Below, piece after piece: positions 4,498 to 40,146 of a stretch of DNA of 64,000 nucleotides (within the stretch, counting starts at the first letter, position 1; every line of letters starts with the position of its first letter). Below the pieces are notes generated by a model. The model was not told the origin of the DNA and searched no databases. It saw only the letters and a program-made list of their open reading frames with translations. The stretch lies in the sequence record OR496884.1; one strand, 5' to 3'. A program made the position numbers and the translations under genes.

Positions 4498-4517
4498 TTA
4501 CGCAGTGATAATGTCTA
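4498..4517 (-). promoter_or_regulatory. Candidate phage early-type promoter
   Basis: - strand TAGACATTATCACTGCGTAA, 16/20 identical to the element at 16589-16608; 41 nt upstream of the HAD gene. Confidence 0.5.
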
Positions 4518-4577
4518 CTTGATCCAAAATGGATATTAAATATTTTGGATTTAACTGTATAAACTAAGGAATTAGTA

Positions 4578-5522: not shown

Positions 5523-5534
5523 CGACAGTCGCGT

Positions 5535-5602
5535 TGGGAAATATTTTTAATATTTCCCAGATACAAAAATCCCTACCTACCCAATGGGTAGGTAGGGATT
5601 TT
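5535..5602. terminator. Tandem hairpins at a convergent junction
   Basis: tgggaaatatt-ttt-aatatttccca (5535-5559) and aaaatccctacctaccca-a-tgggtaggtagggatttt (5566-5602). Confidence 0.75.
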
Positions 5603-5606
5603 ATCG

Positions 5607-5696
5607 TTAGTGGAAGTAATACTTTTGTTGTACATTTCCGGCTTTAAAGAAAAGATCTGGTATTGTTGTTGACCCAATAGGGTTAGTACTACTCAT
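5607..5696 (-). pseudogene. Truncated fifth tailspike gene (anchor only, 29 aa)
   Basis: Hand translation MSSTNPIGSTTIPDLFFKAGNVQQKYYFH*; AGGAG RBS intact; matches tailspike 1 NPIGST..DLFF.AGN; below ORF-track cutoff. Confidence 0.85.
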
Positions 5697-5709
5697 TTAG
5701 GTCTCCTAA

Positions 5710-5735
5710 TAAATGGGGTAAAATCCCCCCATTTA
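5710..5735. terminator. Hairpin after tailspike 3
   Basis: taaatgggg...ccccattta (9-bp stem). Confidence 0.55.
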
Positions 5736-5738
5736 AAA

Positions 5739-7676
5739 TTATAGTTTTTTACCTTTTATCCATCTTACTGCCGATGCCGAACTTACAGAAATTATTTTTA
5801 ACGTAAATTCATCTATTACATCGACTCTAACAACGCCGCCATCTATATGAGGAAATGTAATATAATCACCTACTCTAAAACCGGTTGCTCTTGAATAAGG
5901 ATAACCCTCGTGCGACATGAATTGTCCATTTCCTACTGTACCGATACCTACAATAATGGAATCAAACTCAAAAACAGAACAAGGTAAAGTAATCAAGGTA
6001 TTAGGAGTAAAATCACCTTGGTTAGTCAGATTCTGTATCCCATTGATAGTGTACCCTGTTTCGGTTAGAATTGTTGAAAGGTATTTTCTGTTTGGTGGGA
6101 CGGTGGGACCAAACCTATTAAAGTCCATCCTGACGTTATCGCCTTTAGAAAGACAACGTATAGCAGCAAAGGTCAAACCAATTTCGTTGATAAAATTATC
6201 ACCAATATAAACATTTGGTTTTGCATCTACACCCGCTTCTAAACGGATGACATCACGGTCACCGTCAATCCCGCAATTATAGAATTTATTTTTGGTTAAT
6301 TCAAGATAATCAGCATCTGGACCAATTAACAACGCGGTTTTATTAACATTTCTAAAAATGTTATTTTCAGTATATACTCGACTTGCTTTACTAATATACA
6401 TTCCACCAGAAAGAAAAAGACCTTCATCTGGGTTAGATATCATGCTATCTATCATGTTATTAAATAGAATAATGTCTTCAGATGGATACGCATTGGGAAC
6501 ATAATTATTTACTACAATTGAATTTCCGCCATTCAAATTGGAGACTTTCGCCCCGCTGCCGTCGTAATCATACAAAATTTTGTTAATCCCGGCTACAAGA
6601 TCTTTACAGGAATCAATCACTAACCCTCGTTGAAATGCCCCTCTGGTACGATTGTTTAAGACAATAGAATCATGTAAATTTGTACACTTTATTGGATAAA
6701 TCGTTCTATTAATTTCAAGATTAATGAAATTAATTTTTGTATGTGGTTTGAGACGATCTGGATTAGCCGCGTGCGAACCAACGCCTCCATGGCACATGTC
6801 AAATCGACTATTGGTTATTAAAATATTATTGCAAGGTGTTCCGTCCCAGGGCGGTCCTGCAGGAGCCCCAGCTTGTGATGAATAATCTATCTGTATTGCT
6901 TCATACCCATAAACGGTTGATAGGTCTAGATGGAAATTTCCAAAAAATCCGCAATTATCAACAAGAACATTTTCGCAAGAATTAAATTCAAAAATATGAG
7001 TTTCACGGCCATTATAAAAGTCTATACCAAAAACATAAATATTTTTAGAGTGTACAGGCGTAAAAAACCCTCGGTAACCCGTCGAAATCTTATCACCACC
7101 TAAGAAAATTTTTGCACGTCCATTAAAACATACAAAATTTATTCTATTTCCTAAATCGTATTCCCCAATTATATTCGTGGTTCCGCCGTCAAAAGCAACG
7201 GCCATGCCACCGACATTACAATCAAGTTCAGTACCGGTTTCTAACACCCAGGATGTTGAGTAAGGAATAAATAATCTCCCGGAAATTTTATATTTCCCAT
7301 ATGGGAAATATATTGATCTCCAAACACCTGCAGCCAAAATAGCTTTTTGTATTCCATCAGTAGAATCAGTTTCACCTGTTGGATCTACACCTGGAAATTG
7401 TAATACAGATACTTTTTCTTTAAACATTAATTCTATCGGTACTACTTTTGAACCTTCGCCTTCTTGTTGGAAACCTAAAAGTTCACTTCCCAGTTTAGTT
7501 GAAAAATCATTTTTTAAATTTAAAACTTCTCTTTCAACCAAATGGTACGTTTTTCTTTGTGTACCGAATCGATCCATCCAAAAATCTTCATTACTATGCA
7601 GCGCACGATCCAAATTTCCGGCGTTTGTTAGTAAATCAGACATTGTGCTAGACCCTATTGGGTTTTGACTACTCAT
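5739..7676 (-). CDS. Tailspike / polysaccharide depolymerase 3 (pectate_lyase_3-like)
   Basis: Anchor MSSQNPIGSSTMSDLLTNAGNLDRAL...WMDRFGTQR; GVDPTGETDSTDGIQKAI...IYFPYGKYKIS; EAIQID...DGTPCNNI...GVGSH. Confidence 0.82.
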   Translation of the reverse strand: MSSQNPIGSSTMSDLLTNAGNLDRALHSNEDFWMDRFGTQRKTYHLVEREVLNLKNDFSTKLGSELLGFQQEGEGSKVVPIELMFKEKVSVLQFPGVDPTGETDSTDGIQKAILAAGVWRSIYFPYGKYKISGRLFIPYSTSWVLETGTELDCNVGGMAVAFDGGTTNIIGEYDLGNRINFVCFNGRAKIFLGGDKISTGYRGFFTPVHSKNIYVFGIDFYNGRETHIFEFNSCENVLVDNCGFFGNFHLDLSTVYGYEAIQIDYSSQAGAPAGPPWDGTPCNNILITNSRFDMCHGGVGSHAANPDRLKPHTKINFINLEINRTIYPIKCTNLHDSIVLNNRTRGAFQRGLVIDSCKDLVAGINKILYDYDGSGAKVSNLNGGNSIVVNNYVPNAYPSEDIILFNNMIDSMISNPDEGLFLSGGMYISKASRVYTENNIFRNVNKTALLIGPDADYLELTKNKFYNCGIDGDRDVIRLEAGVDAKPNVYIGDNFINEIGLTFAAIRCLSKGDNVRMDFNRFGPTVPPNRKYLSTILTETGYTINGIQNLTNQGDFTPNTLITLPCSVFEFDSIIVGIGTVGNGQFMSHEGYPYSRATGFRVGDYITFPHIDGGVVRVDVIDEFTLKIISVSSASAVRWIKGKKL

Positions 7677-7692
7677 ATGTCATCCTCTTAAA

Positions 7693-7722
7693 GTTAGTAT
7701 CCCTTACATAAGGGATACTAAC
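7693..7722. terminator. 14-bp hairpin between tailspikes 4 and 3
   Basis: gttagtatccctta-ca-taagggatactaac. Confidence 0.7.
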
Positions 7723-7728
7723 ATTTTG

Positions 7729-9594
7729 TTATATTAGTGCTTTAATACTAATATTAGTATTTGAAAAACTGGTTATGATTTCACATCCAGCATTCCCGGT
7801 TACATATTGTACCCGATAAACCTTTCCTGCTAAAAGTTTAATCGCTATATATGGAATAGGTAGCGTGTTAATTCCTGAAAATACTCTGGTATCAAAGAAA
7901 GTTTGTAAAACAAAATTATCAGTTTCATTGAATAATCGAATCGCCACTCTGGTCCCATCGGCTGGGACATTGACTGTAAATATTCCGCTAAATGAATATA
8001 TACAATCTTCTATGGGGACTATTCCTACATCTACCCATTCCCCGTTTAAATTTTTACCAACTTGTGTAAAGGGGATGTTGACAAAATTTCCAGTTGCGGT
8101 AGGGGTGAAATTTGCTGAAAATCCAAGTTGGATATCTGAGATAGGTGTATTTCCTTGATTAGGAACTGCAGACTTTAATTCAACAGCTGAAAGTATTCTC
8201 CCGCCCGCATTGGAAAGTATGTGGGGTTTTGATCCAAACTCACACATAGAGTCTATTTCAATACGCATTTCGGTATTTCTGGAAATAGACATTGCATAAG
8301 TAAGTGCGTCAGATATATTCTTGTTACCTTTAAATCTGAGTAACTTACAAACGGATCCAGCTATATTGTAACTTGTAGTATAAGAATTTCCCATGTTACT
8401 ATGGGATGCGGGATCTAATGTGTTATAGAAGAAATCCACATTACATCTTTGGGGGTTATTTACCGATCCATATTTTTCAACAACAAATCTTCCAGCTGTG
8501 TTACCAATGAATGTGATGTCTTTCATTTCAAACGTGGAATACTGACTTCCTGTTGAAACTCTTAATACTCGAGCAAAACAAGAAGATACCTTGACACCGC
8601 TAGAAGAAGAAATCCAAATATCATGTTCAAAATTGCAATTGATAATCCGGCCATTACAATTTTCGGAATCTTCTATCTGTGCACCCGCCTCAACGTTTGT
8701 CAACGTCTGGGCTAATCCCGTTTCTGAACAACCATCTATCAAGATTGTTTTACATCTGGCGGCACCAAAAACACTAGTATTTCTTCCACCGGTAACATCA
8801 GAATGCAGGTATTTTACATCGTCAACACTAAAACATAAAAAATGCCCGCCGTTGACTTCATTGGATGCAGTTGATTTACAAGAATCAATAATAACTCTTT
8901 TAGTGGGGTAACCCGTTAATGCGGTTATTGAGGTTCCTGCCCGCACTGCGTAAAAGCCGCCTTTAAATTCTGTACCAAGACACTTTACTTCATCAATACC
9001 ATCTATGTCATTAGGTTCTGCTCGAATTAAAACACCTCTTGTTGTTGATTCTAAGGTCAAACCAAATACATGAGTAATTTTACCTCTAGCGTGAACGTGA
9101 GGAAGACCGGTCACGACACCAGCAAAAACAATTTTAGTTGTTTTTGGGCCGTGGATTATCGTATTTTGTAAATTTAAAATAGTACCGTTAACTAAATAGT
9201 AGTTAGCTGGATTTTTTGGTTCTGGAAAATAAATAGGTCTTCCGGTAGCAAGGGCTAACTTTAAAACAGTACTAATATCAGTTTGATTGGCACGAGCGTT
9301 ATAAGGCGCGTCTGTTATATCTATGGCATTTGCCAATTTAAATCCAACTGTTGCAGGTAGATGTTCTAAATCGCTACTAAATCCAATTTTTCCAGCACCA
9401 GCACCTTGTGCATATGAAAATTCAAAATCATTAACTTTACGTTCCATGCGAGAATAAGTAATGCGCTCTACCCCGAATCTATCGGTGAACGTATCTTCTT
9501 CACTATTCATTGCAAAATCTAAATTTGTTGCATTTAAATAGGCGTCACGGAAGTCTGGACTTCCTATGGGATTACCCGTGCTACTCATGTCCAT
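7729..9594 (-). CDS. Tailspike / depolymerase 4 with C1q-like C-terminal domain
   Basis: Anchor TGNPIGSPDFRDAYLNATNLDFAMNS...FTDRFGVER; beta-helix; C-terminus FSANF...IPFTQVGKNLNG...IYSFSG...KLLAGKVYRVQ resembles the C1q/TNF fold. Confidence 0.8.
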   Translation of the reverse strand: MDMSSTGNPIGSPDFRDAYLNATNLDFAMNSEEDTFTDRFGVERITYSRMERKVNDFEFSYAQGAGAGKIGFSSDLEHLPATVGFKLANAIDITDAPYNARANQTDISTVLKLALATGRPIYFPEPKNPANYYLVNGTILNLQNTIIHGPKTTKIVFAGVVTGLPHVHARGKITHVFGLTLESTTRGVLIRAEPNDIDGIDEVKCLGTEFKGGFYAVRAGTSITALTGYPTKRVIIDSCKSTASNEVNGGHFLCFSVDDVKYLHSDVTGGRNTSVFGAARCKTILIDGCSETGLAQTLTNVEAGAQIEDSENCNGRIINCNFEHDIWISSSSGVKVSSCFARVLRVSTGSQYSTFEMKDITFIGNTAGRFVVEKYGSVNNPQRCNVDFFYNTLDPASHSNMGNSYTTSYNIAGSVCKLLRFKGNKNISDALTYAMSISRNTEMRIEIDSMCEFGSKPHILSNAGGRILSAVELKSAVPNQGNTPISDIQLGFSANFTPTATGNFVNIPFTQVGKNLNGEWVDVGIVPIEDCIYSFSGIFTVNVPADGTRVAIRLFNETDNFVLQTFFDTRVFSGINTLPIPYIAIKLLAGKVYRVQYVTGNAGCEIITSFSNTNISIKALI

Positions 9595-27769: not shown

Positions 27770-30700
27770 TTAACGTGTGTAAGTTGGAAACGTTGGTTTG
27801 GGAAGTACCCAACTAGTTGTTCCTGTATCCCAGTTAAAGAAAGTAGCAACGCGGTTCATATACCAGTTTGATAAATCTTGGTTTAAATTACTTGCACCAA
27901 AGAAACAATCATTCATGGTATAAACATGACCCATATCCCAAAATTCTAATCCTGGATAAGAAACAGCAACGGAGTTTCTAAACACCCCATTAAAGTTTGC
28001 AATGTTTTTAGAAAGTGTAGCTGTGATTTTAAACCCTTCCGAGTTACTAAAATCTAATTCAGTTACACGAGAACCGATAGTCAGCAGTTCTGTTAAACCT
28101 AATCCCCACTTTAATACTGAAACACCAAAAATATCAACGGTGACAATACCAGTGTGAGCACCAGGAATGGTGAAACTATTTAAACCAGCTAATTGATAAA
28201 TTGTTCCATTAACTAACAAATAGGGGGTTCCACCTACCCTGTTAGTAATTGGAATTACTCTTCCTTTAGCGGTATCCCAAAGTAGCCTGGTTGCAACTGT
28301 TTGTTTAAAGAAACGGTTGACAGGTAATCCACTTCCAGGTTTCCCTAAAAACACCGGGAACGAACTACCATCACTGGTTACGTTCATCCGTTTGCGAGCG
28401 ATAACAGGCAATAATGAATTACGCCACCCAGATTGATCTTGGTAACTGAATTCTGTACCGTTTATAAACCCTGCCGGAACGGAACCAAGATGCGGTTCTA
28501 TTTCATAACCAGTTGGATTATTGTAACGACCATAGGCAATCAAGTCGTCACCAATCTGTGTGACAAACAACTCGTCGTAACCAAAGAACTCCTCTATCCT
28601 TGCCTTTACTGGTTTTTTAACCAAGGTGTTTTTTCCATTCACCATGATCACACCACCGACCGGATAAAGTGTGAATCCTTCAGTAGTACCCATCAACCCA
28701 CCAGTCAACGTCAGGAAACCGTATTCCCTAGTAAAGACGCCGTAGTTGTTAGGTGTTTTACGAAACGCCCACATTCCCTTTGATAACATTACAGGACTTT
28801 GATAGTTGATATGAAGTCTATGAGGAAGTTTAGTTCCATAACAAATTTCTTTATCGTAATCTATCTGGTATCCAAGGACAGGATCGTACGGAAAAACAGG
28901 ATCAACGGAATCTAACTTAGGACCAAATGTAAATGTTCCTGTTATTGGATTATGAGTGATTTGTAATTCAACATAAAAGTTATTAAACGGAGCTACATTA
29001 AGCATGACATCATACTTAACTTGATTTAACGCATCTGTCATTTTCATGATGTAAACATCTTGGGATTTAAAACTATCGTACCCAAGAATTGCACCGTGGT
29101 TTATTTGAAGCGTTGATTTCTTGTTAACGTTCATGGTATTAACGGTAATACTGTTAGCTACTGTACCTTGGGGCTTAATTGTTTTACGACCAGACCCGTC
29201 GGTATGAACATAACAATTTTTAATGATTCCGTAATAACAGTCCTTTTCATTACTTGGGTAATCTGCGCTTCCAACGCACTGATTCATCCAAAACAATGTA
29301 GATTTGAAAAAGAAGAACACCTTATGTTGCTTGAACCAACTGCCTGCATTTTTAGCGATCCAATTTAATATATCCTCATGAATGGAGATTGGATTACTAA
29401 AGGTAATTGGATTTTCTAGGTTATTGGGATCAAGTTCATAATTGAGATAACTGGTAAATCCATTACCATTATTGAACACCATGTTGTTGATGTTAATGGT
29501 GCTGGATAAATCATCGTTCTCAATTAAGAAAGACGGAACATCTTCCATCCCGCCAGTAATCCAATTGACGTTTTCTGTTTTAGGACCTAAATAACTTCCG
29601 TAAGGATTTCCTTGCAAATAGTTAGTCCCTGCGTCAACTGTTACCAACCCCCACCGATAACGGTTGCGATAATCTCGACTATAAGTTAAATAAGTAATCT
29701 TTAACTTAGTAGCAGCACCAGGATCTGGGACTGGGACAGGATCATCGGTTAAACCATCATATCGAGGCCAGCGGTTATTCATTGTGATATCAAGAATAGC
29801 ACGTTCTTGTTCAGTAGCAGTCCCTACAGCGACTTTGACGGGAATATGCCTGAGGTGATCACCATACATGCAATCTTGTTCAATATTAGATTGCGCAACG
29901 TAATTGTATTTAGTTGGCTTAGGGAATGGTTTATTGCCATTATTAATAAAAGCAAGACCAGACGTAATTGAATGGTCGTAACTTCCGATATACTGGCGGT
30001 TATAAAACGTATACGTTTTTAAATGTCCGCCAGCCGGATCAAAGACGCCATCTTGACAAAGTGGGTGTTCAGGTTGTTCTTTAACATGAGGAGTGTAACT
30101 TTTAAACAAACCAGATTCAATTAAATCCCAGTTGTCGTTTAAGGTCTGTTTTGCTTGTTCAAAAACACTATCTGTGATCACGTTTACTGACATCTGTTTG
30201 GTAGTGTCATTGAATGTAAATTCTAAACGTGAATCAAGATAACCGTGCCAGTATGCGGTTTTATCTTTATTGAACCAACCAAAATACAACCGAATAGCGC
30301 CACGATGTCTAAGTTTCATCTCCCAACCAAATGTTAACCGTTTCAGTCGTCTAACATCTAGCGATTGAAAGAACAACTCAGTTTCTTCAGCAGGTAGATT
30401 AAACAAGTTTTTAAAAGGGATGACTAAATCAATCTGACCATTTCCGGTATAATCAACAGCTTGTAATTTAGAGCCTACTGGAACGGTAATTTCATTAGTT
30501 TCGTATTTAACGGGATCTTTGGTAATAAATTCGGCTAGTCTGTTAGGGGGACCTTCCTGAAGATCAATTGCCCAAGGATTTAATTTCATTCCATTTAAGG
30601 ATAATCTCAAATGGGGAGATGAAGTAGATTCCCCTGGATAACTTCCTTTTATTAACTTTAAACTAAATTGATACAGGTAATCTTCAGCGCTTTCAAATAT

Positions 30701-31699
30701 ACCGTCAAAAGGAACAGAACTTCCTGTTGTTTCCATTACATCGAACGGAAGAATGTTTTTGTTAAAAGAACGTAAACAAACTTTGTTCCCTTCCATATAA
30801 GAGAAAGCCGAAACTCCAAATAGATTCTCGGAAGTTTTCATAACAGTTCCAAGACTACCTGGGATTCGCCATCCTCTTAACTGAGCGGGTCTAGAACGAC
30901 GTGTATCAATGCGTTTTGCATAAGCCCGTACTTTGGTACCACCTCGAGATGTTTGGACCTCTGGTGCGCTTCCAGTGGGTGTAGCGGTATATCTACCTAA
31001 TTCTGGAGATTGATTAATGTTGGGGAAAATATGCATCCCGGTTTGCGTTGCAAAACACCAAGCAGTTTCACCAATAAACGCTTTAGGATCACTTGGACTT
31101 TGTACCAATTCACCTTTATAAAAGTCAAAATGCCACTGAGGAACTTCTCCGAGATTCCCGCCGGATGCAATAGGGAGAGAACGAGCCGGAATATAAGAAC
31201 GTGGGTCAACTTTAACGCGTTCGTCAATAATAGCAGAAAGCCCTGCTGGATGACAATATAAATCGTTAGCATCACCCTCTCTGTGTTGTTGAACAGTTGC
31301 CATCCCCCAGTTGTCTTTTTTACCAAGACCTACCGTGGTTTTAGTCTCACCATGAACGGGACCAACTTTGTTAGTGTGCTGAAGAAGATGTTCATCAACT
31401 AACGCACCCATTTCATCTATTTTGGTAGCGACAACGTTCCTAACTTCTTCTATGATTTCTTCTTGGGTAATTTCAACAACTTCTCCAGGAGCCGGAATAG
31501 GAACTTCTGGATCAGTAATCCCATCTTCGCGAGGCCAGGTATTGTTGACAATGATATCCAAAATAATACGATCATTGTCAGATGACCCAGAAGACTTTTC
31601 TTGTATTTTCCTATCTACCCGGATAAACGCATCCAACACAACACCTATTGGATTAGTACGTTCCACAGGTACAAGGGGTTTATCTTTATCAATTTTCAT
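27770..31699 (-). CDS. Large tail/baseplate fibre protein with C-terminal DUF285-like repeat
   Basis: 1309 aa; paralog segment HGETKTTVGLGKKDNWGMATVQQ; two ILDI..NN.WPR motifs; C-terminal FWDMGHVYTMNDCFFGASNLNQDLSNW. Confidence 0.7.
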   Translation of the reverse strand: MKIDKDKPLVPVERTNPIGVVLDAFIRVDRKIQEKSSGSSDNDRIILDIIVNNTWPREDGITDPEVPIPAPGEVVEITQEEIIEEVRNVVATKIDEMGALVDEHLLQHTNKVGPVHGETKTTVGLGKKDNWGMATVQQHREGDANDLYCHPAGLSAIIDERVKVDPRSYIPARSLPIASGGNLGEVPQWHFDFYKGELVQSPSDPKAFIGETAWCFATQTGMHIFPNINQSPELGRYTATPTGSAPEVQTSRGGTKVRAYAKRIDTRRSRPAQLRGWRIPGSLGTVMKTSENLFGVSAFSYMEGNKVCLRSFNKNILPFDVMETTGSSVPFDGIFESAEDYLYQFSLKLIKGSYPGESTSSPHLRLSLNGMKLNPWAIDLQEGPPNRLAEFITKDPVKYETNEITVPVGSKLQAVDYTGNGQIDLVIPFKNLFNLPAEETELFFQSLDVRRLKRLTFGWEMKLRHRGAIRLYFGWFNKDKTAYWHGYLDSRLEFTFNDTTKQMSVNVITDSVFEQAKQTLNDNWDLIESGLFKSYTPHVKEQPEHPLCQDGVFDPAGGHLKTYTFYNRQYIGSYDHSITSGLAFINNGNKPFPKPTKYNYVAQSNIEQDCMYGDHLRHIPVKVAVGTATEQERAILDITMNNRWPRYDGLTDDPVPVPDPGAATKLKITYLTYSRDYRNRYRWGLVTVDAGTNYLQGNPYGSYLGPKTENVNWITGGMEDVPSFLIENDDLSSTININNMVFNNGNGFTSYLNYELDPNNLENPITFSNPISIHEDILNWIAKNAGSWFKQHKVFFFFKSTLFWMNQCVGSADYPSNEKDCYYGIIKNCYVHTDGSGRKTIKPQGTVANSITVNTMNVNKKSTLQINHGAILGYDSFKSQDVYIMKMTDALNQVKYDVMLNVAPFNNFYVELQITHNPITGTFTFGPKLDSVDPVFPYDPVLGYQIDYDKEICYGTKLPHRLHINYQSPVMLSKGMWAFRKTPNNYGVFTREYGFLTLTGGLMGTTEGFTLYPVGGVIMVNGKNTLVKKPVKARIEEFFGYDELFVTQIGDDLIAYGRYNNPTGYEIEPHLGSVPAGFINGTEFSYQDQSGWRNSLLPVIARKRMNVTSDGSSFPVFLGKPGSGLPVNRFFKQTVATRLLWDTAKGRVIPITNRVGGTPYLLVNGTIYQLAGLNSFTIPGAHTGIVTVDIFGVSVLKWGLGLTELLTIGSRVTELDFSNSEGFKITATLSKNIANFNGVFRNSVAVSYPGLEFWDMGHVYTMNDCFFGASNLNQDLSNWYMNRVATFFNWDTGTTSWVLPKPTFPTYTR
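29716..29805 (-). repeat. ILDI-NN-WPR peptide repeat, copy B
   Basis: ERAILDITMNNRWPRYDGLTDDPVPVPDP; 24 nt (29774-29797) identical to 31816-31839. Confidence 0.9.
31487..31573 (-). repeat. ILDI-NN-WPR peptide repeat, copy A
   Basis: DRIILDIIVNNTWPREDGITDPEVPIPAP, about aa 43-71 of the 1309-aa protein. Confidence 0.9.
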
Positions 31700-31720
31700 A
31701 AGCTGTTCTCGATTAAGTAA

Positions 31721-31752
31721 AAAAAGATGGAAGGTTTCCCCTCCATCTTTTT
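31721..31752. terminator. Hairpin between tail genes
   Basis: aaaaagatgga...tccatcttttt. Confidence 0.6.
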
Positions 31753-31758
31753 CAATAT

Positions 31759-34700
31759 TTAAGCCGGAGGAAGCGGAATCTCTGGATCTGTTTCACCATC
31801 CAAACGTGGCCATTTGTTATTCATTGTGATATCAAGAATTGAACGATCACGAGTTGGAATGTCTCCGCCGTAAAGTTCAGATTGCTTAATAAACTGATAT
31901 GTTCCAACTTCTGAAAGTTTACCAGAAGATACAGGAATACCGGCATCACGAACCCTGGTTAAAGGATAGCCTGAAATTGCAAATGGTTGATATAAATCTA
32001 TTGTTATAATACCATTTTCACCTGTGGTGATTTTGGATACTAATAGATTATGACCGTCCGCGTGTTTTAATGTCTTGGTGATTTCATAAACACCCCGAGA
32101 ACCAACGGCAGAACAATACAGATAAAATACCGAATTTCTATAATTATCAGAATAAAGACGTAAATCAAATGTTTTCTTTGACGCCAACATGGAGTATCCA
32201 TTAAAAGTCACATTTACGTCACTATTAATAAATACAGTCCAGTTATCCTGTACAAATGTCGCACCTAGGAACCCCAGATCATTAGTGGTAAACCCATTAT
32301 TCTGGGTTATCAATGTTGGATCAATAGGTCTGCCTATATTCATGGCTCCACCAGAAGCAGCTGGGAGATATCCGTTCAATAATCCAATTCCATCGACAGC
32401 CACGGTAGTTTGAGTGTAATATCCAAATACGTTTGCCGGATGGAAATAAAGTTCCGGGCATCCTTGATATTTGCGTTTATCCAGTCGGACATTTGGACTG
32501 TTCATATTACCGACGGTCGGCATAGTGCATCCGGAATAAGTATGAACAATAAGTTCATTATTAGTCTCTCCAACACTATAAACTTCTGAACGAGGTTTAA
32601 GTAAAGTTACTCCTTTAGCTCCGTAACCTGCTATCCAATATCCGGATGATAACGTATAGACATCGGTATTACATATGTCACTGCCGGGGGTAAGATCTAC
32701 GACCGGGGAATCACTATATTTATTTAATGGTGTACAATACGTTCTGGTTGTTAATACATTAATGGTTATCTTTTTATATCCAGTAACAGAATCAATACCA
32801 TTTGGGGACCAATTAAAGGTAATAATAAATCCACGTGTGATTGTTGGATCTTGAGAATAGTGATAAACCACAGTCATTGTGGACGCATAAACAGTTGTGC
32901 TTTCTGGTCCAGGATAAGGGCAAAGATCCACCGACACTATTATATCCATTACATCGACAAATCTTGCACCAATGTATTGTTTTGGAATATCAAGATATTG
33001 TTCTTTTGTTAAAACAATTATCTCCTCAGGTTTATGAGATGGAACAAGTTGTTTAGTGTTTTCATTGTAATCCCATTTCATTGTAATTGGAAGAAACATT
33101 CTTCCAAGGCTACTATCCACCGAGCGTTGTTCTATGCTGGGATTCGCTAACCCGGGAAAAGTGGTCGTATTCCAACTGTTTTTCTTTGGTTGATGTACAT
33201 ATCCGGCGATTGAGTGGGTAGTGGAATACTTATCTCTTTTTTGCGGCCAATTTCTAATTGCATGGGTTTGCAATAAGTTTAATGTGTTCCCGTAATTAGA
33301 ATTAGGTTCCCTACCAAACAACCTATTCGGTATAAAAGGACTTTGCAAGGATTCTCTAAATAAATATTTATTTCCATCCCCACCTTCCGTTAAACGGTTA
33401 AATCCAATTGTTCCTCCACTTTCATTAGTTGCAATGAATTGCTCTAATGGTTTTGTTTTGACACCGCCGTTGTATTCGTAGATGTCTGTGAAAAACCGAG
33501 GAAATCCAGACACACCAAATGGTGACGGTAAACGCTGACTTATAGCAAAGGCTGTGGTCTGCCCTAAATCATTGACTTTACAGGTTGGATTAAAAACACT
33601 TTCATAATCAAAATTTGAATCTCCGGTTTCGTTTAATGGGAGGTAAACGTTCCCGTACGGAGGACCTCCGTCGGAGTCACTATAAACAGCAACCGGACCA
33701 AACCCTCTGACCCAGGAAGCAGCGGGTCTAGTAAATGTACTATTAAAAAGTCTGGCGTATCCTCCCACGTTATCGCCATCCGTAATATACTTTTTTTCTT
33801 CTGCTGTTAAATTAGTGGATTCTCCGGTCAATGGATTTAAAATAGGTTTTTTCCATTTTGGATCAAGTGTCATGATCCCTGCATTAAAATCCAAATCATA
33901 ATTAGGTGTTATTATGCTCCATAGTCCACCAGATGTGCCATTAATGTTGTAGGTCCAATAAACAGAAGCCAATATTTTTAATTTAGCAACACCCTTTACG
34001 TTTGGATTTTCAACAATAATAAAAGTACGGCGCCGATGTGATTGTGTTATATTGACAGGTTGTGAAAAACCAGTTAAAAAACTAGTTACTAAACCGGAAG
34101 CATTTTTTACGTATTCCCCAATCCTGATATTTGGAGAGCTTGGCTTCCTAACTCTATCAACAGTGTCATAACTTAATGATATTTGGGTGGGGGTTATTTT
34201 TGGTTTACCAGGCGCACTTAATGCTGAAAGCGGAAACTTAAATATTTTAATAGTGTAGTTGTTTGGCGCGCCAGCTGGAGGAACAGTAACACCTGTTATA
34301 TCTGATGATGAACCAACCAGGTAAACCCAGTCTCCAACTTTGGAAATTGTTAAAGCGCCAAATAACCCGGCTTCAGCAGTGATTCCTGCCGCCACCAGCG
34401 GCGCAATATCAACCTCAACAAAACTGTGACTATTTGGATCAAGCGTTCCGTTTGAAAAGCTGACCATTATGTTTGACATTGTTGGAGGAAGAGAGCATAT
34501 GGCTATTAAATCAGGACCTGACCCAGCAAGAACATAATCCGGGTTAATTCCCTTTGCTTGCAAATCAGGATGATTATAAGGAAAATATGTCAGTACTGGC
34601 GGAGTGTAATTATACCGATCCAACATGATCTGCTGGTAAATATAATACAATCCCTTTACTTTCCCGTCAAAATGACGCATTAGTCCGACTAACCAACCAT

Positions 34701-35637
34701 TCCCTTCTCTAACAAAACAAGAGTTTTCTGCATCACCACCAAGTCCTTCAAATGAACCTGTTATTGAAGGAGGAAGATAAATTCCTGATCCATAATAACT
34801 AAAGGGTAATTCATTTTGGAAAAGATATTCTTCAGAGTCCGGTTCTGATTCAGAAATCAGTTTTGCCAATCCGGCAGGGGTTGAGTAAAGATCTTGTCTA
34901 AGTCCTTCACCATCTTGTTGTGTAGTTGCTGTTTGAAAGTTTTGTATGTTTTCAATATTAACGTCAACAGGTTTAAGATTGTGGGGATTAATAGATCTAC
35001 GGGCATGGTTTTTTAACGCATTCCAACGTAGGTCGTAAATGTAATCTAATTTCTCCCAGGAATCTTTTTCCATTTCATCAAGCAAAGAGGAGATCTTTTC
35101 ACTTTGTGCTTCAACACGACTTTTCAGTATTGTAAATAACTGAAGCATGTTACCAAACCCGATTACTTCTTCTTTACGTCTAACGTCCATTTGATGCGCT
35201 GACGGATAAAACGTAGATGGTTTACCATCGATTTGAGTTTCGTAGTCAATCTCTCCACCGGAAATCAATGCATTTTCTAAAAGCTCAAGTAACTTGTTTC
35301 GTGAGATAACACCGTTACCAACTTTTTGATAAATAACATCAAGTTCTATGGCGGAGTTTAGAATATGCGGTTTTAATTCAATATGAAGATAAACCGCTTT
35401 GCCTAACAATTTAGTTAATTTAGGAACTTGCGTTTCAAAGGTAAAATCTTGATCCTTTAAAAGTCTAGTCCCGCCGTTATAAATAATAAGACCTTCTTCA
35501 TAGAACGGACCCTCTCCTGGGACAATCCAAGGAGTAGGGATTTCTGACACTTTATGAGTTTCCTCAATTTTGTAAAGAGGATTAACACCAGTGTAATCTA
35601 TGTCGATAATTTCAATATCTTTCATAGCAAACCTCAA
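31759..35637 (-). CDS. Large tail/baseplate protein (paralog family)
   Basis: 1292 aa; NFQTATTQQ...DLYSTPAGL, PPSITGSFEGLGG; ends in the ILDITMNN.WPR motif. Confidence 0.7.
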   Translation of the reverse strand: MRFAMKDIEIIDIDYTGVNPLYKIEETHKVSEIPTPWIVPGEGPFYEEGLIIYNGGTRLLKDQDFTFETQVPKLTKLLGKAVYLHIELKPHILNSAIELDVIYQKVGNGVISRNKLLELLENALISGGEIDYETQIDGKPSTFYPSAHQMDVRRKEEVIGFGNMLQLFTILKSRVEAQSEKISSLLDEMEKDSWEKLDYIYDLRWNALKNHARRSINPHNLKPVDVNIENIQNFQTATTQQDGEGLRQDLYSTPAGLAKLISESEPDSEEYLFQNELPFSYYGSGIYLPPSITGSFEGLGGDAENSCFVREGNGWLVGLMRHFDGKVKGLYYIYQQIMLDRYNYTPPVLTYFPYNHPDLQAKGINPDYVLAGSGPDLIAICSLPPTMSNIMVSFSNGTLDPNSHSFVEVDIAPLVAAGITAEAGLFGALTISKVGDWVYLVGSSSDITGVTVPPAGAPNNYTIKIFKFPLSALSAPGKPKITPTQISLSYDTVDRVRKPSSPNIRIGEYVKNASGLVTSFLTGFSQPVNITQSHRRRTFIIVENPNVKGVAKLKILASVYWTYNINGTSGGLWSIITPNYDLDFNAGIMTLDPKWKKPILNPLTGESTNLTAEEKKYITDGDNVGGYARLFNSTFTRPAASWVRGFGPVAVYSDSDGGPPYGNVYLPLNETGDSNFDYESVFNPTCKVNDLGQTTAFAISQRLPSPFGVSGFPRFFTDIYEYNGGVKTKPLEQFIATNESGGTIGFNRLTEGGDGNKYLFRESLQSPFIPNRLFGREPNSNYGNTLNLLQTHAIRNWPQKRDKYSTTHSIAGYVHQPKKNSWNTTTFPGLANPSIEQRSVDSSLGRMFLPITMKWDYNENTKQLVPSHKPEEIIVLTKEQYLDIPKQYIGARFVDVMDIIVSVDLCPYPGPESTTVYASTMTVVYHYSQDPTITRGFIITFNWSPNGIDSVTGYKKITINVLTTRTYCTPLNKYSDSPVVDLTPGSDICNTDVYTLSSGYWIAGYGAKGVTLLKPRSEVYSVGETNNELIVHTYSGCTMPTVGNMNSPNVRLDKRKYQGCPELYFHPANVFGYYTQTTVAVDGIGLLNGYLPAASGGAMNIGRPIDPTLITQNNGFTTNDLGFLGATFVQDNWTVFINSDVNVTFNGYSMLASKKTFDLRLYSDNYRNSVFYLYCSAVGSRGVYEITKTLKHADGHNLLVSKITTGENGIITIDLYQPFAISGYPLTRVRDAGIPVSSGKLSEVGTYQFIKQSELYGGDIPTRDRSILDITMNNKWPRLDGETDPEIPLPPA
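31762..31851 (-). repeat. ILDI-NN-WPR peptide repeat, copy C (extreme C-terminus)
   Basis: DRSILDITMNNKWPRLDGETDPEIPLPPA*. Confidence 0.9.
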
Positions 35638-35690: not shown

Positions 35691-38600
35691 TTATTCAGGT
35701 ACAAAATCCGTTAATGGATTAAGTATTGTGGAAGTATCCCCAACTTCGTAGATACTCCCTCCTGTTGCCATAATGATTGAACCTTGTCGTGTTTCTCCAA
35801 TAATAGCGCCATCCATGCTAAATCGGTTATAGGCCGTAATGGCATTTATTTGACTAGTTCCACAAATAACTGAAGCAATTAATGAGTTAACTGCTGTTTC
35901 AGCCGTTTGTGTTGGAGTAATCAAATATTCCGGTTTACCAGCACCATACTTTAAATAGACATAAAACCTTTTATTAGCAGGATTAGGGTCTATGTCTCTA
36001 ATGTCGATATAAGTCGCTGGAATATCATAAGCTTTTCCACCGAGGATAACGTTTTTCATTGCTTTAAAATAAACGGTGTATGTGGAACTTAACAAGTTAC
36101 TGACCGTCATTGTGTTATCTGCTTCATACCCTCCTTGAGCAACACGATCATAATACTTGGTATTTGCAGGGACCGTGTATTTCCTAGCAATGATCGCTGC
36201 GCCTTCTGTAAGGGTCCTGTTAGCAAGTGTAGGGACACCCATTGTTGGACCCGGTGTGACAACCGTAGTTGACTCAATAATAACAGATGCGGTTATGTAT
36301 GCTCTAGACCGTGTAATTGTAAAGTCATTTGCAATCTCCAAACCAATCCCAGGCATTAATGTATCACCCACTACGGAATAACGATGGAGAGCTCTGATTT
36401 GAGCAAATATTCCACCTGTATTAACAAGTACGCCGCTTGCATTAGCTAAATTCCAACTTTGGAAATTAACGGGAGTATGCGGTGCCGCACTACCACTAAA
36501 CCCATAAATACCTATGTTAGAAAACGCATCAGAACGGAATAACACTTTAGGGATAAAATCTTTTAAAAACGTAATATTTACGTCAGAGTAATACTGATAC
36601 CCGTTCACTGTTGTAGGTGTCCCAATAGGAACTATTTTAACAGCGGCAGCTGACATATACACTGAGCTAATAGTACTAGATGTTGCTTCTTTCCAACTGA
36701 CTAACAAAATAAAGAACTCTTCATTAGTTGTTGTCCAAGCGCGAGTCAGTGTCCAGCTTTGACTCACATCTTTACCAGTTATCCCTATCTTAGCAAGTTC
36801 AACTGGAAGCTGTCTTGCAAGAGCCAGTTTCAATTGATAAACAACTTTAGGGATAATTCTGATTTCTTTACCGACCGTCCGGATATCATTATCGTAACAA
36901 AGAAGTCCGTCACCAACATCAGCATAGTTCCCTAAAAGAGTTGAAAATCCATCTGCACCTAAGAACTTTCTAAAAGTGTTATTTCTACCAGCTACAACAC
37001 CAGGCATGGCTGCTTGTGTAATAACACATTGAGGACCTAAATTTAACTCATAGGTTTCATTAGCAAGTGGGTAGTGTTTTACAGGTGTTGAACCAAATGT
37101 CATTGTCAACAAGTTATCTGTTTTGGTACTCCAATCTGTATTAAGGTATTTTGTTGCGCGAGCAATCCATTTTGAAGGACCTTTAATAGCTCGTTCAGCA
37201 GGATCTAAAACAGATTGTCTAGCAACAACAACGGCTGTGTTTGGATCACGATCATCGGCAACTCCACACCATGGATTAAAGTTACCAGCAGAAAACCCTA
37301 ATGGATTTCGCTCATCAATAAGTGAATCATCTAACTTTTTAAAAAGTAACGAATCTTCTTTATCAATTAAACTGTCACCAGTTTTATAAACATCGTACTT
37401 AAACAACGTACCGATCAATGGTACTGTGGAAGGTATCACGGGGGACATAACCAGTCTGTAATTTTCGCCTAGAAAAGCGCTACCAGAACCATCTTGTCCA
37501 CTAAACGGCCATTGCGGTATTTTATAACTTCTGAAGTCTTCCCACTCAGGTGAAGAAACAATATCTTCCGGGTTTATACTGTAAAGTTTTTCCCCAGGGC
37601 CTCTTTCAATAACAACACTAGGGGTTGTGTTATTGACCGGTTGAAACAGACCTTTCCACACTATTGTAGTAAGCTGAGTTAAATTACTACCGTCTGTAAC
37701 CCAGAAACAGTTCTGCTCAATTATTACAGCCCATTTACCGTTACTGTGTTTTTTCATAAATGCATGGGGGGAACGATACTGCCAAAATCCACTTAACGGT
37801 TTAGTCGGTATAAATGCCGCTCGAATAATTTTGTTATTTGCATCATATTTTCTAATATACGGTGTAAATACTTTATCATTCATTTTACCGTCATCAGTTT
37901 CAAAATCAATATTGGCAAGTTTGTATGTACCGTCATAGTTAATGTTGGTAAAGATTAACCAGCCGTCTAGGGTGGAAGCACCGGTAAAAGGAATAATGTA
38001 ATCTGGTCTAAGAACTTTAACTTGTGCAGCACTGATTCCAAGTATGATGGAATTAAATTCTCGATGATTACGATCAGCACAGACTTGTGCCAAAGCCCAG
38101 TTTGCACTATAACTTAACCAGTCTCCAGTAATACGCTTTAAAATATGCCGAGATGGATCCAACGTGCCATTTGTTTGAGCCCAGTACCAAATATTTTTAT
38201 CCTCGTCACCTACAACAAGAATGTTTGGACCAGATCCATTAATGATAGCATTTAAATCTGCCCCATCTGCTGTTGCGGTTGGATGTGTATAACGATGACC
38301 GGTATTTTCCCAAATAGGTCTACCTTCTCCCCAACGTTGACATTTAAGAAAATAAAGTCCTTTTACACGACCATTATTTCGACGTTGCAGAACAAGTAAA
38401 TCTCCATTTGATTCAATAGTTGCACCACACCGATGTATCGTTCCACCAAGTCCTTCAAATGAACCATCGATTTTAGGCGGTATAAATGAATCTGAACCAT
38501 ACCTAAGAATAGGTAATGCACCAGCAGGGAAAAGACGTTCGTTACGTCCGGCAGCTAATTCAGCAGCTTTGGTAGCATTATAAGGTGTAATATGAAGGTC

Positions 38601-39329
38601 ATCGCGTAGCCCATCCAATGTTTCTTGCAAAGTTGCTGTTGCAAAGTTATCGACTAAGTCTTTTCCAAGTGCTGCTTTATTGACCCCATGTTCATTATGC
38701 ATTGCACCATCATGGTCATCAATCAATTTAAACAACTGTTTGCGATATTCTTCTATATAAACCAAAATACGTTCTTGGAATTTATTTAAACGAATAGCCA
38801 CGTTGGGTGTGTTGTTTTCTTGAATGGTAACAAGACGAAGAAGTTGTTTTGCAAAATCAGCAAATGCAAAGAACTGATAAGTCCAGTCGTGCTGATGGAT
38901 ATCAGGGACAAACCAAAGCGGTTTATTATCAATATTATCCCAATGTACCATTCGATCATCTTCAGTAAGATTTCTTAACATGTTAAGAATTTCATTACTC
39001 AGTTTATTAAAATTCCCTACTGTTTGATAATCGATTTTCCATTGATCTACATCTTTATTTAAAATCCGGATAAACAACCCAACAGGTTTACTAGTGTATT
39101 GGGTTAGTTTTCCCATTAATCCATAGAACTCGTAATCTTTATCGAGTTCCATTCGTTGACCATTGGGAAAATACATTTTTACACTATTGATGTAAAATGG
39201 TGCTTGTAATGGAATAAAGAAATTATTATGGGGGTTACTGGACCGTTTCCCAGCTTCTAATGTAATTTGATTAAAGGTAGAAATACCTGTTAAATCAAGT
39301 TTGTAAAGACCGTGATCTTCTCTGTTCAT
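35691..39329 (-). CDS. Large tail/baseplate protein (paralog family)
   Basis: 1212 aa; DNFATATLQE...DLHITP, PPKIDGSFEGLGG shared with neighbour (23 nt identical at about 38443 and 34736). Confidence 0.7.
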   Translation of the reverse strand: MNREDHGLYKLDLTGISTFNQITLEAGKRSSNPHNNFFIPLQAPFYINSVKMYFPNGQRMELDKDYEFYGLMGKLTQYTSKPVGLFIRILNKDVDQWKIDYQTVGNFNKLSNEILNMLRNLTEDDRMVHWDNIDNKPLWFVPDIHQHDWTYQFFAFADFAKQLLRLVTIQENNTPNVAIRLNKFQERILVYIEEYRKQLFKLIDDHDGAMHNEHGVNKAALGKDLVDNFATATLQETLDGLRDDLHITPYNATKAAELAAGRNERLFPAGALPILRYGSDSFIPPKIDGSFEGLGGTIHRCGATIESNGDLLVLQRRNNGRVKGLYFLKCQRWGEGRPIWENTGHRYTHPTATADGADLNAIINGSGPNILVVGDEDKNIWYWAQTNGTLDPSRHILKRITGDWLSYSANWALAQVCADRNHREFNSIILGISAAQVKVLRPDYIIPFTGASTLDGWLIFTNINYDGTYKLANIDFETDDGKMNDKVFTPYIRKYDANNKIIRAAFIPTKPLSGFWQYRSPHAFMKKHSNGKWAVIIEQNCFWVTDGSNLTQLTTIVWKGLFQPVNNTTPSVVIERGPGEKLYSINPEDIVSSPEWEDFRSYKIPQWPFSGQDGSGSAFLGENYRLVMSPVIPSTVPLIGTLFKYDVYKTGDSLIDKEDSLLFKKLDDSLIDERNPLGFSAGNFNPWCGVADDRDPNTAVVVARQSVLDPAERAIKGPSKWIARATKYLNTDWSTKTDNLLTMTFGSTPVKHYPLANETYELNLGPQCVITQAAMPGVVAGRNNTFRKFLGADGFSTLLGNYADVGDGLLCYDNDIRTVGKEIRIIPKVVYQLKLALARQLPVELAKIGITGKDVSQSWTLTRAWTTTNEEFFILLVSWKEATSSTISSVYMSAAAVKIVPIGTPTTVNGYQYYSDVNITFLKDFIPKVLFRSDAFSNIGIYGFSGSAAPHTPVNFQSWNLANASGVLVNTGGIFAQIRALHRYSVVGDTLMPGIGLEIANDFTITRSRAYITASVIIESTTVVTPGPTMGVPTLANRTLTEGAAIIARKYTVPANTKYYDRVAQGGYEADNTMTVSNLLSSTYTVYFKAMKNVILGGKAYDIPATYIDIRDIDPNPANKRFYVYLKYGAGKPEYLITPTQTAETAVNSLIASVICGTSQINAITAYNRFSMDGAIIGETRQGSIIMATGGSIYEVGDTSTILNPLTDFVPE

Positions 39330-39381: not shown

Positions 39382-40146
39382 TTAAGTCCAAAGACCTTGA
39401 GCGTATGCACGAATAAGGTATTTTGTTGCATTTAGATTCATTAATACCTGCGAGCTTTCACCCTCGAGCAAATCTTCTTGTTCGACCATTGCCCAGTCCT
39501 GTAAATGCAAAAGACCTAGGTCAGCAAGTGTTGCTTTATGTGCGTCTCGAAGATCGGCTTCTAAATGACGTTCAATCAATGCTTGTAAAGATTCCGGGTT
39601 TCCTGGAGAGGCTACCGCATCAATATAACTTTGCATAGCAACCATCATGTCGTCATAGCCGATGGTATCACTTGCAGGATGATCATGAGGGTCCGGCGGG
39701 AACACCAATGGAATATTGACAATCTGACTCCAATCCGCACGTCTTGGTGCTGTCAGAATAGTAGCAACTGCTTCTGCATACGCAATGTCATCCAGAACAA
39801 AATCAGCACCAATTGTGTTATATTCAATAACAAGGTTGGTTGGATCTGTTACGTTATGAACTTGTACACCGCTGTATGCTAACTGGCCGTATTGTCGAAC
39901 AAAGGCACCAAAAGGAAACGCAAAGGAAAAGTCGCCAGTTTCCATTCTAAGTTCACGACCAGAATCTTTTAAAAACATTTTAAAACTGGTTGTAAAAAAT
40001 GGACCTTTACGGGGAAGAAACACGACACCTTTTGGATTAGGTTCTACGTGAACTAATTCGTCACGTATTTCGTTTTCTGGATTATCGTTAAACGGATTCC
40101 AAGGATAGATCAATTGACCGACTGAGGTGGCGATATCATTTGCCAT
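39382..40146 (-). CDS. Virion structural protein, short paralog of the large tail proteins' N-domain
   Basis: FLPRKGPFF...YNTIG...DWSQIVNIPLVFPPDPHDH...AHKATLADLG parallels the N-termini of the adjacent paralogs. Confidence 0.65.
   Translation of the reverse strand: MANDIATSVGQLIYPWNPFNDNPENEIRDELVHVEPNPKGVVFLPRKGPFFTTSFKMFLKDSGRELRMETGDFSFAFPFGAFVRQYGQLAYSGVQVHNVTDPTNLVIEYNTIGADFVLDDIAYAEAVATILTAPRRADWSQIVNIPLVFPPDPHDHPASDTIGYDDMMVAMQSYIDAVASPGNPESLQALIERHLEADLRDAHKATLADLGLLHLQDWAMVEQEDLLEGESSQVLMNLNATKYLIRAYAQGLWT

What the first reader, a model, noticed from the sequence alone, without database searches (positions are those of the whole stretch)
29716..31851. A ~29-aa peptide module occurs three times in two giant tail proteins: candidate docking site for the tailspikes
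Seen: R-x-ILDI-xx-NN-x-WPR-x-DG-x-TD-x(2-3)-P-x-P lies near the N-terminus of the 1309-aa protein (31487-31573, after an SSGSSDN linker), in its middle (29716-29805, between beta-like HIPVKV and KITYLTY) and at the extreme C-terminus of the 1292-aa protein (31762-31851). Copies B and C share 24 identical nt, pointing to recent copying or gene conversion. The third large paralog lacks it. Inference: all three positions look like termini or loops, so this may be a portable, exposed binding peptide. The phage also has four tailspikes with one shared anchor, so the motif could be a repeated socket for building a branched adsorption apparatus. I do not recognise it from any described family.
Basis: partly seen in the sequence, partly recalled or inferred. 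Interest (0 to 1): 0.85.

Follow-up and report, generated by a model that had tools for sequence, protein, structure and literature searches.

The report
Copied peptide cassette in phage fibres
A roughly 30-residue peptide found only in one small group of Aeromonas jumbo phages has been inserted three times into loops or ends of two neighbouring tail-fibre proteins and kept by selection, so it is probably an exposed binding peptide, but nothing ties it to the tailspikes.

Summary
The window is Aeromonas phage AerS_266 (genus Chaoshanvirus, a phiKZ-like jumbo phage). The peptide occurs at residues 43-71 and 632-660 of the 1309-aa protein A and at the C-terminal end of the 1292-aa protein B.

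- **Insertion.** Alignments with eight other jumbo-phage genera show each copy is a clean in-frame insertion of 34-38 residues: into an N-terminal linker, into a beta-hairpin turn, and onto a free C-terminus.
- **Order of gain.** The sister phage AhC3_1 has only the N-terminal copy. One copy therefore came first and two were added on the Chaoshanvirus stem.
- **Distribution.** A profile search of 1.84 billion proteins finds the motif nowhere else. Pfam and PDB give nothing.
- **Selection.** Synonymous sites between copies are saturated while the peptide is conserved, which means selection on the protein.
- **Structure.** AlphaFold models each copy as a short helix followed by low-confidence coil.
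- **Host proteins.** A and B belong to the phiKZ gp131 family of peripheral fibre proteins.
- **Tailspike idea.** The tailspike "NPIGS" anchor is widespread in phages that lack the motif, and anchor number does not track motif number. The "socket for tailspikes" reading is unsupported.

Best reading: a lineage-specific, exposed, multivalent interaction peptide with an unknown partner. Interest is moderate.

The parts
27770..31699 (-). Gene A, 1309 aa (annotated 'BspA family leucine-rich repeat surface protein'). It is a fibre protein with two motif copies. The C-terminal half from residue 662 matches phrog_17273, and the C-terminal end matches DUF285.
31487..31573 (-). Motif copy 1, core, A residues 43-71. 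The whole insertion relative to other genera is residues 37-73, nt 31481-31591. It lies between the conserved N-terminal helix and a predicted long helix (79-109).
29720..29806 (-). Motif copy 2, core, A residues 632-660. The whole insertion is residues 627-664, nt 29708-29821. It sits in the turn of a hairpin between the invariant GDHLRHIP strand and the YLT..RD..RYRW strand.
31759..35637 (-). Gene B, 1292 aa from TTG 35637 (the record starts it at ATG 35625, giving 1288 aa). It is a gp131-family fibre protein and its C-terminus carries motif copy 3.
31762..31848 (-). Motif copy 3, core, the last 29 residues of B. The whole C-terminal extension beyond the end shared by other genera (...SELY) is nt 31762-31869, 36 residues.
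35691..39329 (-). Gene C, 1212 aa, a paralogue of B (30% identity over the first ~400 residues and in the C-terminal domain). It has no motif.
39382..40146 (-). Gene D, 254 aa 'minor tail protein', a paralogue of the N-terminal domain of C. It completes the conserved D-C-B-A fibre gene block.
45..9594 (-). Tailspike cluster, given as context only; no link to the motif was shown. Four intact genes carry the NPIGS-type N-terminal anchor (45-1817, 1925-3688, 5739-7676, 7729-9594). There is also a short remnant of a fifth.

Best explanation
The motif is a lineage-specific peptide cassette.

Build: a flexible Gly/Ser/Thr lead-in, an ~11-residue helix (D/E-R-x-I-L-D-I...N-N), a W-P-R...D-G-x-T-D turn, and a proline-rich tail.

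History: it arose once in the N-terminal linker of fibre protein A, in the common ancestor of AhC3_1 and the Chaoshanviruses. On the Chaoshanvirus stem it was copied in frame into two more permissive places: a hairpin turn in A's central domain and the free C-terminus of the neighbouring fibre protein B. Copying was probably by ectopic recombination within the locus, with occasional short conversion tracts afterwards.

Host proteins: A and B belong to the phiKZ gp131 family of peripheral baseplate fibres, which in phiKZ form hetero-oligomeric, flexible adsorption fibres.

Shown here: it is an insertion; it is confined to this clade; it is under purifying selection at the peptide level; it lies at ends or loops and is modelled as a short helix plus unstructured tail.

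Inferred: the three copies display the same tethered, exposed short binding peptide several times per fibre complex. That would give multivalent attachment to one common ligand, either another virion component or a host-envelope component. The ligand is not identified.
For: - Clean insertions at all three sites compared with OBP, D3, D9, Kc263, AH04, SXP01, N1M2 and PS1. AhC3_1 has only copy 1.
- In an NJ tree of A built without the motif columns, AhC3_1-like is sister to Chaoshanvirus, bootstrap 76/100. This agrees with PMC12184794.
- Same three positions in AerS_266, ZPAH34, CF8 and environmental contigs L019 and L020.
- The profile against 1.84 billion representative proteins hits only the A and B proteins of this clade. 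tblastn against 50,697 phage records finds 3 phages with 3 places each.
- Between paralogous copies pS is 0.5-0.95 and pN 0.2-0.3. Between orthologues dN/dS is 0.02-0.22.
- Copies 1 and 3 rank at the 81st-85th percentile of 29-residue windows for AerS-CF8 identity. Eight columns are invariant in 9 copies.
- AlphaFold predicts helices at 41-51, 630-640 and B 1263-1273, followed by coil, with pLDDT below 50. Strands 619-626 and 665-675 flank copy 2.
- The N-terminal domain of B is homologous to PhiPA3 gp150 and a 201phi2-1 virion protein. PMC13250141 names PhiPA3 gp150 and 201phi2-1 gp216 as gp131 homologues.
- In the same phage family, a disordered segment docking onto another protomer has been proposed for the DUF7941 filaments (PMC13742148).
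Against: - No partner is identified and no binding was tested.
- Low pLDDT may reflect the shallow alignments (19 and 11 sequences) rather than true flexibility.
- The middle copy has decayed in the CF8 lineage: 25 bits against about 65, and the 2nd percentile of conservation. So not every copy is needed.
- Short conversion tracts could keep copies alike without selection for a shared ligand.
- The whole case rests on about five genomes in one small clade.
Confidence: 0.45

Rival explanations
1. One reading: each motif copy is a socket that binds the N-terminal NPIGS anchor of a tailspike, so that several tailspikes hang on fibres A and B as a branched adsorption apparatus.
For: - Chaoshanviruses combine three motif copies with an unusually large set of anchor-bearing spikes. 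The TS3 anchor finds 4-5 places and the AhC3_1-type anchor finds 2 more.
- AhC3_1 has one motif and one detected anchor gene.
- The AerS_266 paper itself suggests the shared N-termini attach the spikes to conserved tail proteins (PMC10673249).
Against: - The anchor is found in 94 phage records. These include Pseudomonas D3-like and Klebsiella siphophages that lack the motif, and jumbo phages whose A and B lack the insertion: PS1, PS2, ACP1 and AVP1 with 2 or more places each. BUCTxx100 has 4 places and gave no motif match. So anchors dock without the motif.
- The counts do not match: 3 motifs against at least 5-6 anchors.
- CF8 has a decayed middle copy but no fewer anchors.
- Nothing was tested directly.
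Confidence: 0.12
2. Self-association. The helices of the copies bundle with each other, within a trimer or hexamer or between B's distal end and A. They would act as a small oligomerisation clamp or as a tie between fibre subunits, not as a site for a foreign ligand.
For: - Copy 1 lies directly before a predicted long helix (79-109). In phiKZ the fibre base contains a six-helix bundle made by gp131-family N-terminal segments (PMC13250141).
- Copy 3 caps a C-terminus, a usual place for fibre clamps.
- B's C-terminus and A's N-terminus are encoded about 275 nt apart.
- The same residues are invariant in all copies.
Against: - Copy 2 sits in a loop of a globular domain, not on an obvious symmetry axis.
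- Related phages assemble the same proteins without the motif.
- There is no sequence likeness to any solved oligomerisation element: the PDB profile search returned 0 hits at E up to 10.
- The oligomeric state of A and B is unknown.
Confidence: 0.15
3. A tolerated passenger. The cassette has no function of its own. It spread by local illegitimate recombination into places where insertions do no harm, and it looks conserved because of gene conversion and the short time elapsed.
For: - All three sites are permissive: a linker, a hairpin turn and a free end.
- The motif is confined to one small clade.
- The middle copy is decaying in CF8.
- There are signs of conversion tracts.
- AlphaFold confidence is low.
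Against: - Synonymous sites between copies are saturated while the peptide is kept; dN/dS is 0.02-0.22 between orthologues.
- Copies 1 and 3 are more conserved than most of their host proteins.
- No copy has been deleted in any of five genomes.
- The DNA shows no hairpin excess (z from -1.2 to +0.8) and no terminal inverted repeats, and there are no copies outside the two genes. It therefore does not behave as selfish DNA.
Confidence: 0.15
4. A structural spacer. The acidic N-N...D-G-x-T-D stretch binds a metal ion and, with the proline-rich tail, forms a stiff or hinged spacer that changes fibre geometry without binding a partner.
For: The stretch contains an Asp/Asn/Gly-rich turn followed by alternating prolines, and the G and several D/N columns are conserved. 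This rests on inference only.
Against: - There is no match to any calcium-binding or other family in Pfam or PDB.
- A spacer would not need the conserved hydrophobic helix or the W-P-R triplet.
- A spacer has little meaning at the extreme C-terminus of B.
Confidence: 0.06

Closest known systems
phiKZ gp131-family peripheral fibre proteins (gp131, gp133-135; PhiPA3 gp150, 201phi2-1 gp216)
   Same: - The first 300 residues of B are homologous to PhiPA3 gp150 and to the 201phi2-1 and Goslar counterparts.
- D, C, B and part of A are clustered paralogues that share N-terminal segments. gp131-135 do the same in phiKZ, where they form hetero-hexameric fibres on the outer baseplate (PMC13250141).
   Different: This comparison concerns the host proteins, not the motif. 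No gp131-family member outside the AhC3_1 and Chaoshanvirus clade has the cassette. A shares only one subdomain with B and C and carries a DUF285/LRR C-terminus.
Head-to-tail docking of a disordered linker onto another protomer in chimallivirus DUF7941 filament proteins (Goslar gp22/gp23)
   Same: It is the same phage family. A flexible segment of one baseplate-associated protein is proposed to dock on another protomer to build extended host-recognition structures, and some of those proteins end in LRR domains, as A does (PMC13742148).
   Different: Pfam finds no DUF7941 in A, B, C or D. The predicted secondary structure here is a helix, not an added beta strand. The docking partner here is unknown.
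Branched tailspike assemblies with adaptor domains (CBA120 TSP1-4, G7C gp63.1/gp66, phiKp24 hyperbranched fibres)
   Same: This phage also has several receptor-binding proteins with a shared N-terminal anchor (PMC9700779 appears in the listing).
   Different: From my own knowledge, those systems use folded adaptor domains, not a 29-residue peptide. Here the anchors occur widely without the motif.
Rickettsia palindromic elements (in-frame selfish insertions in protein-coding genes)
   Same: Both are short in-frame insertions of about 100-150 nt that land at surface-permissive positions of unrelated parts of proteins (from my own knowledge of Ogata et al. 2000).
   Different: There is no palindromic DNA and no terminal inverted repeats. 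There are only three copies, all in two adjacent genes. Conservation is at the peptide level, not the DNA level.
Short C-terminal trimerisation tags of phage fibres (T4 fibritin foldon)
   Same: The size is similar (about 27-30 residues) and one copy sits at the C-terminal end of a fibre protein.
   Different: The motif profile finds nothing in the PDB at E up to 10, although that tag is present in many entries. AlphaFold predicts a helix and not a beta hairpin. The two other copies are not C-terminal.

Membership tests
phiKZ gp131-family peripheral fibre proteins (host proteins B, C, D; A in part) | gp131-like N-terminal domain detectable by sequence | tested here: met
   B residues 1-300 match PhiPA3 gp150 (12-263, E 3e-5), 201phi2-1 (E 5e-6), Goslar and EL. 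PMC13250141 names PhiPA3 gp150 and 201phi2-1 gp216 as gp131 homologues. A shares only residues 75-182 with B and C.
phiKZ gp131-family peripheral fibre proteins (host proteins B, C, D; A in part) | Cluster of paralogues with similar N-termini and different C-termini | tested here: met
   The D-C-B-A block is conserved in 12 phages.
phiKZ gp131-family peripheral fibre proteins (host proteins B, C, D; A in part) | Located as fibres on the outer baseplate of the virion | not testable with these tools
   There are no proteomic or structural data for this genus. No homologue has a solved structure findable by sequence.
   The anchor is in 94 records. Most are small siphophages without the motif. 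It is also in PS1-like jumbo phages whose A and B lack the insertion.
   Chaoshanviruses have 3 motifs and at least 5-6 anchors. AhC3_1 has 1 and 1. PS1-like phages have 0 and at least 2. BUCTxx100 has 0 and 4.
   No multimer prediction or binding assay is available here.
In-frame selfish DNA of the Rickettsia palindromic element type | Palindromic DNA or terminal inverted repeats | tested here: not met
   Fold-energy z-scores are -1.24, +0.75 and -0.8. The longest terminal inverted match is 3-5 nt.
In-frame selfish DNA of the Rickettsia palindromic element type | Many copies spread over the genome, conserved as DNA | tested here: not met
   There are three places per genome, all in genes A and B. 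Synonymous sites are saturated.
Any described protein domain or solved structure | Significant profile match | tested here: not met
   Pfam on pieces carrying the motif gives 0 families at E up to 1. The PDB profile search gives 0 hits at E up to 10. The search of 1.84 billion proteins finds only this clade.
DUF7941 filament proteins of chimalliviruses | DUF7941 module | tested here: not met
   Pfam scans of A, B, C and D show only DUF285 in A. I could not confirm that this Pfam copy holds the DUF7941 model.

The most novel reading that the evidence does not exclude
A jumbo-phage lineage invented a short peptide 'tag' and pasted it at several exposed points of its fibre proteins. One accessory component, for instance extra receptor-binding proteins, could then be hung on the fibres in multiple copies. 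That would be a natural plug-and-socket system based on a linear peptide, not on a folded adaptor domain, caught at the one-copy (AhC3_1) and three-copy (Chaoshanvirus) stages.
Probability: 0.15. Interest if true: 0.7.

Novelty: new variant of a known kind. Interest (0 to 1): 0.4.

Why it matters
The peripheral fibres of phiKZ-like jumbo phages are the least resolved part of their virions. How these phages mount many receptor-binding proteins is an open question.

This is a compact, datable example of a short peptide being invented and then copied to new positions within the adsorption apparatus. The intermediate one-copy stage is still extant, and the cassette is under clear purifying selection. 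It gives structural biologists three defined, probably exposed sites to look at in a future virion map.

If the peptide proves to be a docking tag, it would show a way of building multivalent fibres that differs from the folded adaptor domains known so far. If it does not, it remains a tidy case of lineage-specific insertion in fibre proteins, of interest mainly to specialists in this phage group.

Tried and rejected
- **Known domain.** Pfam on 100-120-residue pieces, a PDB profile search at E up to 10 and PHROGs name nothing for the motif.
- **External donor.** A word-based search of 5.8 billion protein clusters with the motif region found only ZPAH34. The exhaustive profile search of 1.84 billion proteins found only this clade.
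- **Selfish palindromic DNA.** Rejected.
- **Fold of the host proteins.** phmmer and profile searches of the PDB with A and B gave nothing. Foldseek of the A model gave no match at E up to 0.001, with TM about 0.1. The models themselves are poor: mean pLDDT 54.7 and 43.4.
- **Anchor count in AhC3_1.** A local HMM scan of the whole genome failed, because loci fetched in one batch are not all copied to the script machine. I used tblastn and an ORF listing instead. The count of one anchor in AhC3_1 therefore has tblastn sensitivity only.
- **Rejected profile job.** It was rerun with permitted rows.
- **Proteomics.** There are none for AerS_266, ZPAH34 or AhC3_1 in their papers.


Full report
**What the window is**

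The 7.9 kb around the finding is 100% identical to Aeromonas phage AerS_266 (OR496884.1) at the same coordinates. AerS_266 is a 243.7-kb phiKZ-like jumbo phage of the genus Chaoshanvirus. ZPAH34 is 78% identical and CF8 is more distant.

The finding lies in a block of four minus-strand genes:
- D, 39382-40146, 254 aa
- C, 35691-39329, 1212 aa
- B, 31759-35637, 1292 aa
- A, 27770-31699, 1309 aa

Next come a baseplate gene on the other strand and an SbcC-like gene. The order D-C-B-A-baseplate-SbcC is kept in all twelve related phages I fetched: OBP, D3, D9, Kc263, AH04, SXP01, N1M2, PS1, AhC3_1, CF8 and ZPAH34, besides AerS_266 itself.

**The observation**

The peptide is present three times:
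- A residues 43-71, nt 31487-31573
- A residues 632-660, nt 29720-29806
- the last 29 residues of B, nt 31762-31848

The peptide and the quoted flanks are correct. Paralogue C has no copy. Each copy scores 57-72 bits against a motif profile. The 24-nt identical run between copies 2 and 3 is real.

**It is an insertion, gained stepwise**

I aligned the first 800 residues of A and the last 300 residues of B from twelve phages. The motif is absent, as one clean gap of 34-38 residues, from OBP, D3, D9, Kc263, AH04, SXP01, N1M2 and PS1 at all three sites.

- Copy 1 lies between a conserved N-terminal segment and a predicted long helix.
- Copy 2 replaces a turn of a few residues between two strands that carry invariant residues (G613-P620 before it; Y670, L671, R675, D676 and Y681 after it).
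- Copy 3 is an extension beyond the end that all other B proteins share.

AhC3_1, and a near-identical environmental protein P0005, have a diverged copy 1 only. A neighbour-joining tree of A built without the motif columns puts the AhC3_1 lineage as sister to the Chaoshanviruses (bootstrap 76/100). This agrees with the terminase and capsid trees of PMC12184794.

The most economical history is one gain in A's N-terminal linker, then two further copies on the Chaoshanvirus stem. All three copies are at the same positions in AerS_266, ZPAH34, CF8 and two environmental contigs.

**Distribution**

- tblastn of the motif against 50,697 phage records finds only these three phages, three places each.
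- A word-indexed search of 5.8 billion protein clusters finds only ZPAH34.
- A profile of eight copies, read against all 1.84 billion representative proteins, hits only A of CF8, the AhC3_1-like A, and B of CF8.
- Pfam and the PDB give nothing.

So there is no detectable donor outside the clade.

**Selection and conversion**

Over 27 aligned codons, paralogous copies differ at 50-95% of synonymous sites but only 20-30% of non-synonymous sites. Orthologous copies give dN/dS of 0.02-0.22.

Between AerS_266 and CF8, copies 1 and 3 are more conserved than 81-85% of all 29-residue windows of their proteins. The middle copy falls in the lowest 2%. In the CF8 lineage the middle copy keeps the N-N-R-W-P...D-G...D-P half but has lost the helix consensus.

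The 24-nt run is specific to AerS_266 and is improbable given the peptides and codon usage (P about 0.003 for that pair). CF8 has runs of 15-17 nt between other pairs. Short conversion tracts therefore occur, but the copies are old.

The DNA has no excess hairpin potential and no terminal inverted repeats.

**Structure**

AlphaFold2 of A 1-800 (19 sequences) and of B 900-1292 (11 sequences) gave poor models overall, with mean pLDDT 54.7 and 43.4. In all three copies the model has the same 11-residue helix (A 41-51, A 630-640, B 1263-1273) followed by coil, with pLDDT below 50. Copy 2 is flanked by strands 619-626 and 665-675.

Each copy is bracketed by Gly/Ser/Thr-rich and Pro-rich residues. 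This fits a tethered, exposed peptide. With such shallow alignments, low confidence is only weak evidence for flexibility.

**What A and B are**

No homologue has a solved structure findable by sequence or by fold.

The first 300 residues of B are homologous to PhiPA3 gp150 and to the 201phi2-1, Goslar, EL and RAY counterparts. The phiKZ structural atlas names PhiPA3 gp150 and 201phi2-1 gp216 as homologues of gp131. It shows that the gp131 paralogues form hetero-hexameric, flexible peripheral fibres attached under the outer baseplate through their N-terminal domains and a six-helix bundle (PMC13250141).

D, C and B share that N-terminal region. A shares one subdomain and ends in DUF285/LRR repeats. 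So the motif decorates the adsorption fibres themselves.

**The tailspike idea**

The window holds four intact spikes with the NPIGS-type N-terminus and a short remnant of a fifth. The genome has at least one more outside the window.

The anchor is found in 94 phage records:
- many 40-57-kb Pseudomonas and Klebsiella siphophages that lack the motif;
- jumbo phages whose A and B lack the insertion (PS1, PS2, ACP1, AVP1, pAEv1810), plus BUCTxx100 with four places and no motif match.

AhC3_1 has one motif copy and one detected anchor gene. Anchors therefore dock without the motif, and the numbers do not correspond. Binding itself could not be tested.

**Verdict**

The insertion history, the confinement to the clade, the peptide-level selection and the permissive, probably exposed positions are shown. 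The function is inferred.

I judge a repeated, exposed interaction peptide with an unidentified common ligand the most likely reading (0.45). The rivals are:
- self-association of the copies (0.15);
- a tolerated passenger without function (0.15);
- the tailspike socket (0.12);
- a metal-binding spacer (0.06).

The nearest published mechanism in this phage family is the proposed docking of a disordered segment of one DUF7941 protein onto another protomer (PMC13742148). A-D are not DUF7941 proteins by Pfam.

The likeness was tested only with the motif's own profile against the PDB, with no hit.

Noticed in passing
window 5607-5696 (-), with neighbours 4578-5522 (+) and 3834-4466 (-): A 29-codon remnant of a fifth NPIGS-anchor gene; only the start of the gene is left (one truncation). 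It lies next to two unrelated ORFs, one with a weak HAD-hydrolase match and one with no match. A spike gene seems to have been replaced here.
   Followed up: partly
window 35679-35648, 27766-27735, 31744-31730 (all - strand): Terminator-like hairpins followed by T-rich tails sit after fibre genes C and A (14-bp stems) and, weakly, after B. The fibre genes may be separate transcription units.
   Followed up: no
window 35623-35637: The open frame of B reaches a TTG at 35637. The GenBank record starts the gene at the ATG at 35625 (1292 against 1288 residues). The true start is undecided.
   Followed up: no
L008:4501-12531 (D3), L013:4501-8025 (PS1), L006:9001-15129 (D9): Homologues of A vary from 1174 to 2676 residues through their C-terminal DUF285/LRR part. 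The first ~1280 residues stay alignable. The distal end looks like the fast-changing part.
   Followed up: no
OR496884.1 155216-155353 (outside the window): AerS_266 has a further anchor-bearing gene, annotated as a polysaccharide lyase tail spike. It is of the anchor type also found in AhC3_1 and PS1-like phages.
   Followed up: no
L018:11577-12988 (AhC3_1 ORF234-235): AhC3_1's only detected anchor sits on a 163-residue protein. It is followed by a 311-residue glycine-rich ORF, which may be a two-part fibre.
   Followed up: no
L006:1472-5148 (D9): In phage D9 the counterpart of C is annotated as two ORFs (D9_0215 and D9_0216) instead of one. This could be a split gene or a sequencing error; I did not examine it.
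   Followed up: no
L002, L006, L007, L009-L013 and L015-L018 were readable by the other tools but not by scripts.
   Followed up: yes
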